A DNA stretch of 49,853 nt from Octopus bimaculoides (Eukaryota), in the NCBI RefSeq assembly GCF_001194135.2, contig NC_068998.1, positions 3,324,029-3,373,881 on the forward strand. Direction: 5' to 3'. The notes under the pieces are model-generated. The model ran no database searches. It saw only the letters and a list, made by a program, of their open reading frames with translations, and had not been told where the DNA came from. The position numbers and the translations under genes are program-made. Every line of letters starts with the position of its first letter. Position 1 is the stretch's first letter. Of the stretch, positions 11,797 through 12,307 are shown piece after piece.

Positions 11797-12307
11797 CAGG
11801 GTTATTCAAAAAGAATGAACCGATTTCATTACGCAATATTTTAATAAGGAAAACAATATAAAACTCCAGCTAAGTCCCAAGTATTTACTCACAAACAACT
11901 TTTATTTCCTGTCTTACAAGAGTTCAATGTGACCACAAACTGCAGCATGGGCAACATCAATGCGATGAGAGAATTTCCTCCCAGATGCATATCAGCATAT
12001 CAAAAACAAGTTCATTATGGAGCTAAAAAATAAATTTGCTTTGCTTGAGGCGATTCCTGACGATATTGACATAGAAGGGAAATGGAAAAAGTTCGATAAA
12101 GCATTCAACCAGACGGTCAAAGAAGTGGATCGTAATATGCTGATATGCATATGGGAGGAAATTCTCTTATCGCTGGTGGCCACATTGAACACTTGGTAAG
12201 ACACGAAATAAAAGCTGATTGTGAGTAAGTACTTGTGTACTTAGCTGGAGTTTTCCTTATTAAAATATTGCGAAATGAAATCGGTTCATTCTTTTCGAAT
12301 AACCCTG
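11797..12307. mobile_element. 511-bp non-autonomous foldback (MITE-like) element with two inverted Tc1-type 3' ends (11797-12000 and 12135-12307) around a 134-bp spacer, flanked by TA
   Basis: TA|cagggttattc...gaataaccctg|TA. The arms align in reverse complement over their full length apart from two deletions in the right arm. Arms encode a Tc1-like C-terminus (MLICIWEE.SHRIDVAHAAVCGHIELL*). Confidence 0.9.

What the first reader, a model, noticed from the sequence alone, without database searches (positions are those of the whole stretch)
11797..12307. Foldback element built from two Tc1 right ends with an apparent LINE fragment fused in frame
Seen: TA-flanked, with inverted arms of about 204 and 173 bp. 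Both arms include the transposase C-terminal coding tail, so both are the same (3') end rather than a left and a right end. The 134-bp spacer reads NKFIMELKNKFALLEAIPDDIDIEGKWKKFDKAFNQTVKEV and continues in frame into DRNMLICIWEE. Established: F.LEL.NRF..L......IE..W.....EVLG is typical of the linker between endonuclease and RT in RTE-type LINEs. Inference: a MITE born by end-duplication with capture of retroelement DNA, which would be transposable and form a ~170-bp dsRNA hairpin (ADAR or Dicer substrate) if transcribed.
Basis: partly seen in the sequence, partly recalled or inferred. Interest (0 to 1): 0.7.

Follow-up and report, generated by a model that had tools for sequence, protein, structure and literature searches.

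The report
Two-right-ended Tc1/mariner MITE carrying LINE filler
This is a decayed 511-bp non-autonomous DNA transposon whose two long inverted arms are both copies of the right end of a Tc1/mariner element and whose middle is a captured piece of a LINE. It is a tidy example of a way of making such elements that has already been described, not a new kind of thing.

Summary

- **Structure:** window 11797-12307 is a TA-flanked element with inverted arms of about 205 and 173-180 bp around a spacer of about 130 bp.
- **Arms:** both carry the antisense or sense copy of the last ~29 codons, the stop codon and the 3' UTR of a Tc1/mariner-superfamily transposase.
- **Native ends:** a non-chimeric deletion derivative of the same family (L008) has a different left end. 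It shares only ~45-47 bp of inverted repeat with its right end and runs into an HTH (DUF4817) start. All three known left arms of the chimera match L008's right end over ~195 bp. The long arms are therefore not native.
- **Spacer:** it is 83% identical in DNA to a LINE fragment. It is homologous to the linker that lies between the endonuclease and the RT in LINE relatives.
- **Copies:** two further loci from independent read-set assemblies have the same two junctions but unrelated flanks, so the chimera transposed.
- **In-frame fusion:** this is an accident of a 7-bp deletion private to the window copy.
- **Not tested:** RTE-clade membership, transcription, small RNAs and RNA editing.
- **Precedent:** the Goblin MITE of Aedes, plus filler capture by abortive gap repair.

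It is a new member of a known kind, of modest interest.

The parts
11795..11796 (.). TA at the left boundary (target-site duplication)
   Evidence: Read directly from the sequence. TA also flanks the copy in L003 and the related element in L008.
11797..11843 (-). Terminal ~47 bp of the left arm. This is the only part that corresponds to the family's native terminal inverted repeat.
   Evidence: The left and right ends of L008 match 40/47 and are then unrelated. The window's left arm matches L008's left end over 45 bp only.
11844..12002 (-). Rest of the left arm. It is a reverse-oriented copy of right-end subterminal sequence: 3' UTR, stop codon (antisense TTA at 11914-11916) and the last ~29 codons of the transposase (11917-12002). 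An 8-bp tandem GCATATCA x2 sits at its inner end.
   Evidence: The whole left arm aligns to the right end of L008 (763-571) at 89.7% over 194 columns, E = 8e-71.
11999..12127 (+). Captured LINE fragment, sense strand. It encodes the linker that follows the endonuclease domain. ATCA at 11999-12002 is microhomology shared with the left arm. A 7-bp deletion relative to the other copies lies at about 12122.
   Evidence: 82.8% DNA identity to L007 over window 11999-12126. Peptide hits P0001 and P0003, and P0005-P0008. 49% identity to the P0008 linker, E = 6e-13. Alignment A3.
12128..12307 (+). Right arm, a true-orientation right end. GATCGT (12128-12133) is probably transposase-derived. It is followed by the coding tail (carrying a 23-bp deletion and a 1-bp insertion), the TAA at 12197-12199, the 3' UTR (with a 10-bp deletion) and the terminal repeat ending CCCTG.
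   Evidence: Both deletions are absent from the right arm of L003, and the 23-bp one also from that of L001, whose contig ends before the site of the 10-bp one.
12308..12309 (.). TA at the right boundary, at the start of a (TA)12 run that abuts an assembly gap

Best explanation
The element is an old, dead copy of a non-autonomous Tc1/mariner-superfamily transposon (a MITE-like element). Both ends of its progenitor were built from the right end of the autonomous parent: about 205 bp comprising the terminal repeat, the 3' UTR, the stop codon and the last ~29 codons. Between them sits about 135 bp of filler copied from the endonuclease-RT linker region of a LINE.

Shown:
- The parent family natively has only a ~47-bp TIR and a distinct left end.
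- Both arms are right-end sequence.
- The spacer is an internal LINE piece.
- The same chimera sits at three or more unrelated TA sites, so it was mobilised in trans by a transposase that accepted two right ends.

Inferred:
- It arose in one event of abortive gap repair (synthesis-dependent strand annealing) after excision of a parent copy.
- In that event the strand copying the left repeat switched to the right repeat of the template and copied the right subterminal region in inverted orientation.
- A further template switch then picked up LINE DNA before end joining at short microhomology (ATCA at the left junction).

The open frame across spacer and arm has no function.

The confidence of 0.85 is for what the element is. 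For the origin mechanism it is about 0.5.
For: - **Arms:** they are real and unique in the window.
- **Ancestral state:** there are no fixed left/right differences among six arms, so the ancestral arms were a near-perfect ~205-bp inverted repeat. Their consensus carries an intact tail ORF.
- **Native ends:** L008 runs TA|CAGGG left end, ~180-bp 5' UTR, ATG with a DUF4817 HTH (E = 8.7e-8), a deletion junction, the tail RVWEEFSYRLDVAHAAGGGHIEHL*, then a right end ...CCCTG|TA. Its ends share 40/47 bp and are then unrelated.
- **Left arms are right ends:** the left arms of the window, L003 and L001 match L008's right end over 194-203 columns (82-90%). They match its left end over only 38-45 bp.
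- **Spacer is LINE:** (83% to L007). In L011 the linker is followed directly by an RVT_1 + DUF6451 ORF that hits L1 ORF2p and R2 in the PDB. L012 has the order Exo_endo_phos_2, linker, RVT_1, DUF6451.
- **DNA-level capture:** the piece is internal and lacks a LINE 3' end, so it was captured as DNA and not retrotransposed in.
- **Family:** alignment A3 shows the same junctions in three copies, and the flanks are unrelated.
- **Precedent for the mechanism:** Goblin/Ozma in Aedes, and filler capture by template switching (PMC3814204).
- **Precedent for two identical ends:** a Mos1 transposon with two right repeats is 26-fold more active in vitro than the natural arrangement (PMC4505599).
Against: - No full-length autonomous parent was found. 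The native ends are inferred from one deletion derivative, in a metagenome contig of unknown organism, that is ~90% identical to the arms.
- Only three loci are known, so high copy number is not shown.
- The species behind the window and the read sets is unknown.
- The left arm carries right-type bases at 5 of the 7 positions where L008's two repeats differ, including position 8. The simple 'switch after copying the left repeat' model therefore fits only if the switch was almost at the tip.
- The inner breakpoints of the left arm, the right arm and the L008 deletion all lie within about 25 nt. The model does not explain this clustering.
Confidence: 0.85

Rival explanations
1. The parent natively has ~200-bp terminal inverted repeats that overlap its stop codon. 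On this view the element is an ordinary internal-deletion MITE with LINE filler.
For: Long repeats occur in some Tc1-like elements (established knowledge). The two arms end within 5-9 nt of each other, as a native repeat boundary would.
Against: L008 keeps a left end that is contiguous with the HTH start of the transposase and shares only ~47 bp with the right end. All three left arms match L008's right end, not its left end.
Confidence: 0.05
2. Two parent copies inserted in inverted orientation close together inside a LINE. Their two right ends were used together as a composite transposon, and later deletions trimmed it down to arms plus a residual LINE piece.
For: It would explain right-type bases right up to the tip of the left arm and the LINE origin of the middle. 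Transposases of this superfamily can use two identical ends (PMC4505599).
Against: It needs at least two separate deletions that remove both element bodies and their left ends yet keep 135 bp between them. No trace of left-end or internal transposon sequence is left in any copy. No such intermediate was seen.
Confidence: 0.1
3. It is a local inverted duplication or an assembly artefact of this gap-rich scaffold, not a transposable unit.
For: The window has 20 N gaps. One gap lies 25 bp from the element, and the right flank is a TA microsatellite.
Against: The same structure with the same junctions is assembled independently in six contigs from four read sets, at two other loci.
Confidence: 0.02
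4. The element is maintained for a function, either the LINE-transposase fusion ORF or a hairpin RNA gene.
For: The window copy has a 76-codon stop-free frame. The fold is very stable, -256.8 kcal/mol with z = -25.8.
Against: The frame differs in each copy: there is a stop at the junction in L003 and different indels in L001. Copies are only 77-85% identical, with private deletions in the arms. The stability follows trivially from the inverted repeat.
Confidence: 0.03

Closest known systems
Goblin, a Stowaway-like MITE derived from the Tc1/mariner element Ozma in Aedes aegypti (Yang et al. 2013, PMC3814204)
   Same: [quoted passage not shown] The target is TA. There is microhomology at the junction. 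The proposed origin is a template switch from the left to the right repeat during gap repair.
   Different: Here the duplicated right end reaches ~85 bp into the transposase coding region, and the two arms are separated by ~135 bp of foreign (LINE) filler. The parent is a different family with a DUF4817 HTH and a ...GGHIEHL tail. The autonomous parent has not been found.
Deletion derivatives with filler DNA made by abortive gap repair (Ds elements, Rubin and Levy 1997, as cited in PMC3814204)
   Same: An internal deletion with capture of unrelated genomic sequence between the retained ends.
   Different: That work concerns the hAT superfamily in maize. Here the filler is a LINE coding fragment, and both retained ends are the same end.
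Engineered mariner/Tc1 transposons with two identical preferred ends (Mos1 with two right repeats; PMC4505599)
   Same: Two copies of one end are a competent substrate, and for Mos1 a 26-fold better one. This is consistent with the chimera having spread.
   Different: Those are laboratory constructs of a DD34D mariner. Whether the right end is the preferred end in this family is unknown.
Mu killer of maize, an inverted partial duplication of MuDR (recalled from memory, not checked here)
   Same: An inverted duplication that includes transposase-gene sequence. If transcribed it would give dsRNA matching the parent's mRNA.
   Different: Mu killer is a single non-mobile locus with shown silencing activity. 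Here there is no expression or small-RNA evidence, and the element is itself mobile.

Membership tests
Non-autonomous Tc1/mariner-superfamily element (MITE-like) | TA target-site duplication | tested here: met
   TA flanks both ends in the window, in L003 and in the related L008. The window's own site lies in TA-rich DNA, so that copy alone is weak evidence.
Non-autonomous Tc1/mariner-superfamily element (MITE-like) | Terminal inverted repeats shared with a transposase-encoding relative | tested here: met
   The termini match both ends of L008, which encodes a DUF4817 HTH (E = 8.7e-8; weak HTH_48 of Mos1) and the same C-terminal tail.
Non-autonomous Tc1/mariner-superfamily element (MITE-like) | The parent transposase has the DDE/D catalytic domain of the superfamily | tested here: inconclusive
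   Only the last ~29 codons and the HTH were seen. P0010 and P0012 were retrieved with a hybrid query made of the window's 8.5-9.5 kb remnant plus the arm-tail consensus. P0012 itself scored only E = 0.1 against that query. They carry ...PDFNPLDY... and end in GGHIE like the arms' tail. P0012 gives a DDE_3 hit below cut-off (E = 1e-4).
Non-autonomous Tc1/mariner-superfamily element (MITE-like) | Small, non-coding, present at several unrelated sites | tested here: met
   511-556 bp. The frames are broken differently in each copy. There are three loci with unrelated flanks. A high copy number could not be tested.
Tc1 family in the strict sense (DD34E) | 34 residues between the second D and a catalytic E | tested here: inconclusive
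   The parent's catalytic region is not available. P0012, a weakly matching relative of this type (E 0.1 against the hybrid query), has 37 residues between FQQD and PLD, counted directly. That is DD37D (maT-like), so 'Tc1' is safe only at superfamily level.
Goblin-type MITE (both arms from one subterminal region) | The parent has short terminal repeats, and both subterminal regions of the MITE match the parent's right end | tested here: met
   using L008 as a proxy for the parent's ends.
Goblin-type MITE (both arms from one subterminal region) | Microhomology at the internal junctions | tested here: inconclusive
   Left junction: ATCA is shared by the arm and the LINE. Right junction: the parent sequence upstream of GATCGT is unknown.
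Foldback (FB) elements of the Drosophila type | Long inverted repeats built of tandem subrepeats, with a 9-bp target duplication | tested here: not met
   There are no tandem subrepeats in the arms apart from one 8-bp doublet. The target is TA. The element is foldback-like in shape only.
LINE (non-LTR retrotransposon) origin of the spacer | Homology to the segment between the endonuclease and RT domains of LINE ORFs | tested here: met
   Domain order in L011 and L012: Exo_endo_phos_2 (E = 3e-4), linker, RVT_1 (E = 1.5e-25), DUF6451. PDB hits are to L1 ORF2p and R2.
RTE clade of LINEs | Phylogenetic placement of the RT and endonuclease within RTE, with a single compact ORF | not tested
   No RTE reference sequences were available. 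The compact endonuclease-RT layout and the C-terminal motif fit my recollection of RTE/BovB, but that is memory and not a test.
Pack-type transposon (host gene fragment capture) | The captured piece comes from a host gene | tested here: not met
   The captured piece is itself transposable-element (LINE) sequence.

The most novel reading that the evidence does not exclude
The two-right-end design is not a neutral accident. It makes a better substrate than the parent itself, as with Mos1 carrying two right repeats. Read-through transcripts of its ~200-bp arms, which include the last ~85 nt of coding sequence and the 3' UTR, would fold into dsRNA that yields small RNAs against the parent's transposase mRNA. 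It would then be a mobile, self-spreading 'Mu killer'-like silencer of its own family. The clustering of three independent breakpoints within ~25 nt, next to an 8-bp tandem repeat, could mark a hot spot for repair-synthesis pausing that makes such derivatives recurrently.
Probability: 0.08. Interest if true: 0.55.

Novelty: new member of a known kind. Interest (0 to 1): 0.3.

Why it matters
The origin of MITEs with long inverted repeats, whose autonomous relatives have short ones, is documented by few clear cases. This family is a clean extra example. Both arms can be traced to the right end because they carry the transposase's stop codon and last codons. The filler can be traced to a defined internal LINE segment, and the chimera demonstrably moved afterwards.

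For genome annotation, such elements produce spurious chimeric ORFs (P0002 and P0004 are gene calls of exactly that kind) and strong hairpins. Beyond that the finding is ordinary repeat biology in a repeat-rich draft genome.

Tried and rejected
- **Word-indexed protein search** with the chimeric peptide: no candidates.
- **Exact-ORF look-up** of the 60-aa ORF: not on record.
- **Pfam** on the chimeric ORF, the tail and other window fragments: no hits.
- **Metagenome DNA scans:** the 22-mer of the terminal repeat gave 0 hits. A degenerate 25-mer gave one hit on a bacterial contig with no other similarity to the element, a chance match, and was discarded.
- **Literature search for the SRA run numbers** to name the organism: only an unrelated plant paper.
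- **Cluster look-up:** no source names for any relative.
- **Literature on DUF6451:** no paper.
- **Search for an autonomous parent:** a hybrid query made of the window's own Tc1/mariner remnant plus the arm-tail consensus found only P0010-P0012, with no full-length transposase.
- **tblastn of the LINE RT against the window:** no other piece of that LINE family in the window.
- **Rejected readings:** fold-back priming of the nascent strand, because the 3' end at the right junction has no complementarity to the left junction (read from the sequence). A 5'-truncated LINE retrotransposition into a pre-existing palindrome, because the piece is internal and lacks a LINE 3' end.

Full report
**1. 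The observation**

- The window is a gap-rich, microsatellite-rich eukaryotic scaffold with 20 runs of N and 21-45% G+C.
- At 11797-12307 the sequence runs TA|CAGGGTTATTC...GAATAACCCTG|TA.
- The inverted match 11797-12000 against 12307-12135 is 77% over 206 columns, E = 7.7e-46. Nothing else in the window matches the element.
- The low percentage is due to 10-bp and 23-bp deletions in the right arm. Over shared columns the arms are 92.6% identical.
- The right-hand TA is the first unit of a (TA)12 run that ends in a 248-N gap, so this copy's target duplication and right flank are not informative.

**2. The spacer is LINE DNA**

- An exhaustive HMMER search with the 68-aa frame 11993-12196 gave eight hits.
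- P0001 is 84% identical over the spacer. It then continues KEVIGVKKKESK... where the window turns into the arm. Its 512-bp contig L007, from a marine metagenome, matches window 11999-12126 at 82.8% and nothing else in the element.
- P0003 and P0005-P0009 are more distant fragments. Their common pattern is ...RGADVASDHxLV...YDVxKL...FxLELRNRFAVLEA...I..KW..F...YN.TAE.VLGRKK..W. The spacer is 49% identical to P0008, E = 6e-13.
- In L011 the P0008 linker is followed immediately by a 544-aa ORF with RVT_1 (E = 1.5e-25) and DUF6451. That ORF hits L1 ORF2p and R2 proteins in the PDB.
- In L012 the order is an Exo_endo_phos_2-like ORF (E = 3e-4, below cut-off), the P0006 linker, RVT_1, then DUF6451.
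- The spacer is therefore an internal piece of a LINE ORF, from the linker between endonuclease and RT. Membership of the RTE clade was not tested. The layout fits what I remember of RTE/BovB, but that is only a lead.
- The piece lacks any LINE 3' end, so it was acquired as DNA and not by retrotransposition into the element.

**3. It is a family**

- P0002 and P0004 are not LINE proteins. They are gene calls across other copies of the same chimera.
- Their contigs come from read-set assemblies: L003-L006 are one locus in four runs, and L001/L002 a second locus in two runs.
- In alignment A3 the three copies share the left arm, the same junction of the left arm with the LINE piece, the same LINE piece, the same junction with the right arm, and the right arm, at 76-78% identity overall.
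- The flanks of the three loci have no similarity to each other or to the window. TA is at the ends.
- The chimera was therefore mobilised after it formed.

**4. The in-frame fusion is an accident**

- L003 and L001 have seven more bases at the junction of the LINE piece and the right arm (…GTACTCAGTG|GATCG…).
- In L003 the LINE frame stops right there (…KSVLNGS*, P0002).
- In L001 other indels produce a different read-through (P0004).
- Only the window copy, with its private 7-bp deletion, joins the LINE frame to DRNMLICIWEE. No fusion protein is conserved.

**5. Both arms are right ends**

- Aligning the six arms shows no position where all left arms differ from all right arms. The ancestor therefore had an essentially perfect ~205-bp inverted repeat.
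- The arm consensus reads DMLIRVWEEFSHRIDVAHAAGGGHIEHL*, followed by ~120 bp to the terminus.
- A search with a hybrid query (the window's own Tc1/mariner remnant plus this tail) found P0011. It has a DUF4817 helix-turn-helix (E = 8.7e-8; weak HTH_48 of Mos1) joined to RVWEEFSYRLDVAHAAGGGHIEHL.
- Its contig L008 holds a 564-bp, TA-flanked, non-chimeric deletion derivative. It runs: left terminus, ~180-bp 5' UTR, ATG and HTH, deletion junction, tail, 3' UTR, right terminus.
- The two ends of L008 match 40/47 and are then unrelated.
- The window's left arm aligns to L008's right end at 89.7% over 194 columns (E = 8e-71), but to its left end over only 45 bp. The left arms of L003 and L001 behave the same way.
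- This removes the main alternative, a parent with native long repeats overlapping its stop codon.
- Even within the terminal 47 bp, the chimera's left arm has the right-end base at 5 of the 7 positions where L008's ends differ.

**6. Which superfamily**

- The TA target, the repeats, the HTH and the tail place the parent in the Tc1/mariner (IS630-Tc1-mariner) superfamily.
- The hybrid-query search also returned P0010 and P0012, both ending in GGHIE like the arms' tail. P0010 matched mainly through the remnant part of the query, and P0012 only weakly (E 0.1).
- The window's own remnant at about 8480-9448 resembles the arms' tail too: DKDHLMRACQRFRPRIEVAIE against DRDMLIRVWEEFSHRIDVAHAA.
- These three carry ...PSSPDFNPLDY.... 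In P0012 there are 37 residues between the second D and the PLD aspartate, i.e. DD37D.
- The parent's own catalytic core was not seen, so 'Tc1' should be read at superfamily level only.

**7. How it probably arose and worked (inference)**

- The closest precedent is Goblin in Aedes aegypti. [quoted passage not shown]
- The authors explain Goblin by a template switch of the newly made left repeat onto the right repeat during synthesis-dependent repair of the excision gap. They note that template switching can also capture sequence from other loci (PMC3814204).
- The present family fits that scheme with one extra switch into a LINE. ATCA microhomology is visible at the left junction. The right junction cannot be judged because the parent sequence upstream of GATCGT is unknown.
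- That two identical ends can work is known. A Mos1 transposon with two right repeats is 26-fold more active in vitro than the natural arrangement, and other family members also prefer one end (PMC4505599).
- A composite origin from two inverted parent copies inside a LINE is less parsimonious but not excluded.

**8. The hairpin**

- As a single strand the element folds into one long stem: -256.8 kcal/mol, against a shuffle mean of -105.3, z = -25.8. For L003 the values are -207.6 kcal/mol and z = -13.9.
- This follows from the inverted repeat and says nothing about expression. No RNA data could be examined.

**9. Unexplained**

- Three breakpoints lie within about 25 nt of one another, ~195-215 bp from the right terminus: the inner end of the left arm, the inner end of the right arm (5-9 nt further in) and the independent deletion in L008 (13 nt further out).
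- They sit beside an 8-bp tandem repeat, TGATATGC TGATA(T/C)GC.
- A pause site for repair synthesis, or a minimum length of subterminal sequence needed for mobility, could explain this. Neither was tested.

**10. Verdict**

The element is a new member of a known kind (Goblin-type MITE with filler DNA). It is old and decayed, with no sign of function, and is of modest interest.

Noticed in passing
window 8480-9448 (+): A decayed Tc1/mariner-type transposase remnant with stops and frameshifts. It reads ...ILLGVREMPSPHF..GLRVNAAVYTVVLEKVVKP...LPSSPDFNPLDYYAWGVV...DKDHLMRACQRFRPRIEVAIE*. It belongs to a different family from the arms (no DNA similarity), but its C-terminal tail is clearly related. 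tblastn with P0010 gives 43% over 9254-9442.
   Followed up: partly
window 43071-43325 (-): An 85-codon stop-free stretch that reads like a mariner transposase fragment (...LVTGDEKWIFYRNVKRRKQW...). Pfam gave no hit for this short piece.
   Followed up: partly
window 41275-41454 (-), next to the gap 41455-42004: A stop-free stretch ...KTLATDKFKLWCLQFALYPRLQWSLML that reads like the C-terminal part of a LINE ORF2. It has no Pfam hit and is not the same LINE family as the spacer.
   Followed up: partly
window 11987-12002 and 12136-12151; L008 about 570-585: Three independent inner breakpoints fall within about 25 nt of the parent sequence, beside an 8-bp tandem repeat: the left arm, the right arm and the L008 deletion. 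This may be a deletion or pausing hot spot.
   Followed up: partly
L008 180-644 (P0011): The database protein reads an in-frame TGA as W (GPGWPRVWEEF), and the tool reports that the gene does not translate to the query under table 11. The 65 residues before MASPQQ are read-through of the 5' UTR. P0002 and P0004 are likewise spurious gene calls across MITE copies.
   Followed up: yes
window, whole: Very high simple-repeat content: (TA)n, (CA)n, (ATC)n, (AGT)n, (GGT)n and TATG-type repeats. There are 20 assembly gaps in 49.9 kb. The element lies between a (GGT)n/(GTT)n block (11540-11690) and a (TA)n run plus gap. The organism was not identified.
   Followed up: no
L013 187-211: The only metagenome hit to the degenerate terminal-repeat pattern lies on a contig whose long, dense ORFs look bacterial. 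Nothing beyond the 25-nt pattern resembles the element. It is a chance match and unrelated to the family.
   Followed up: yes
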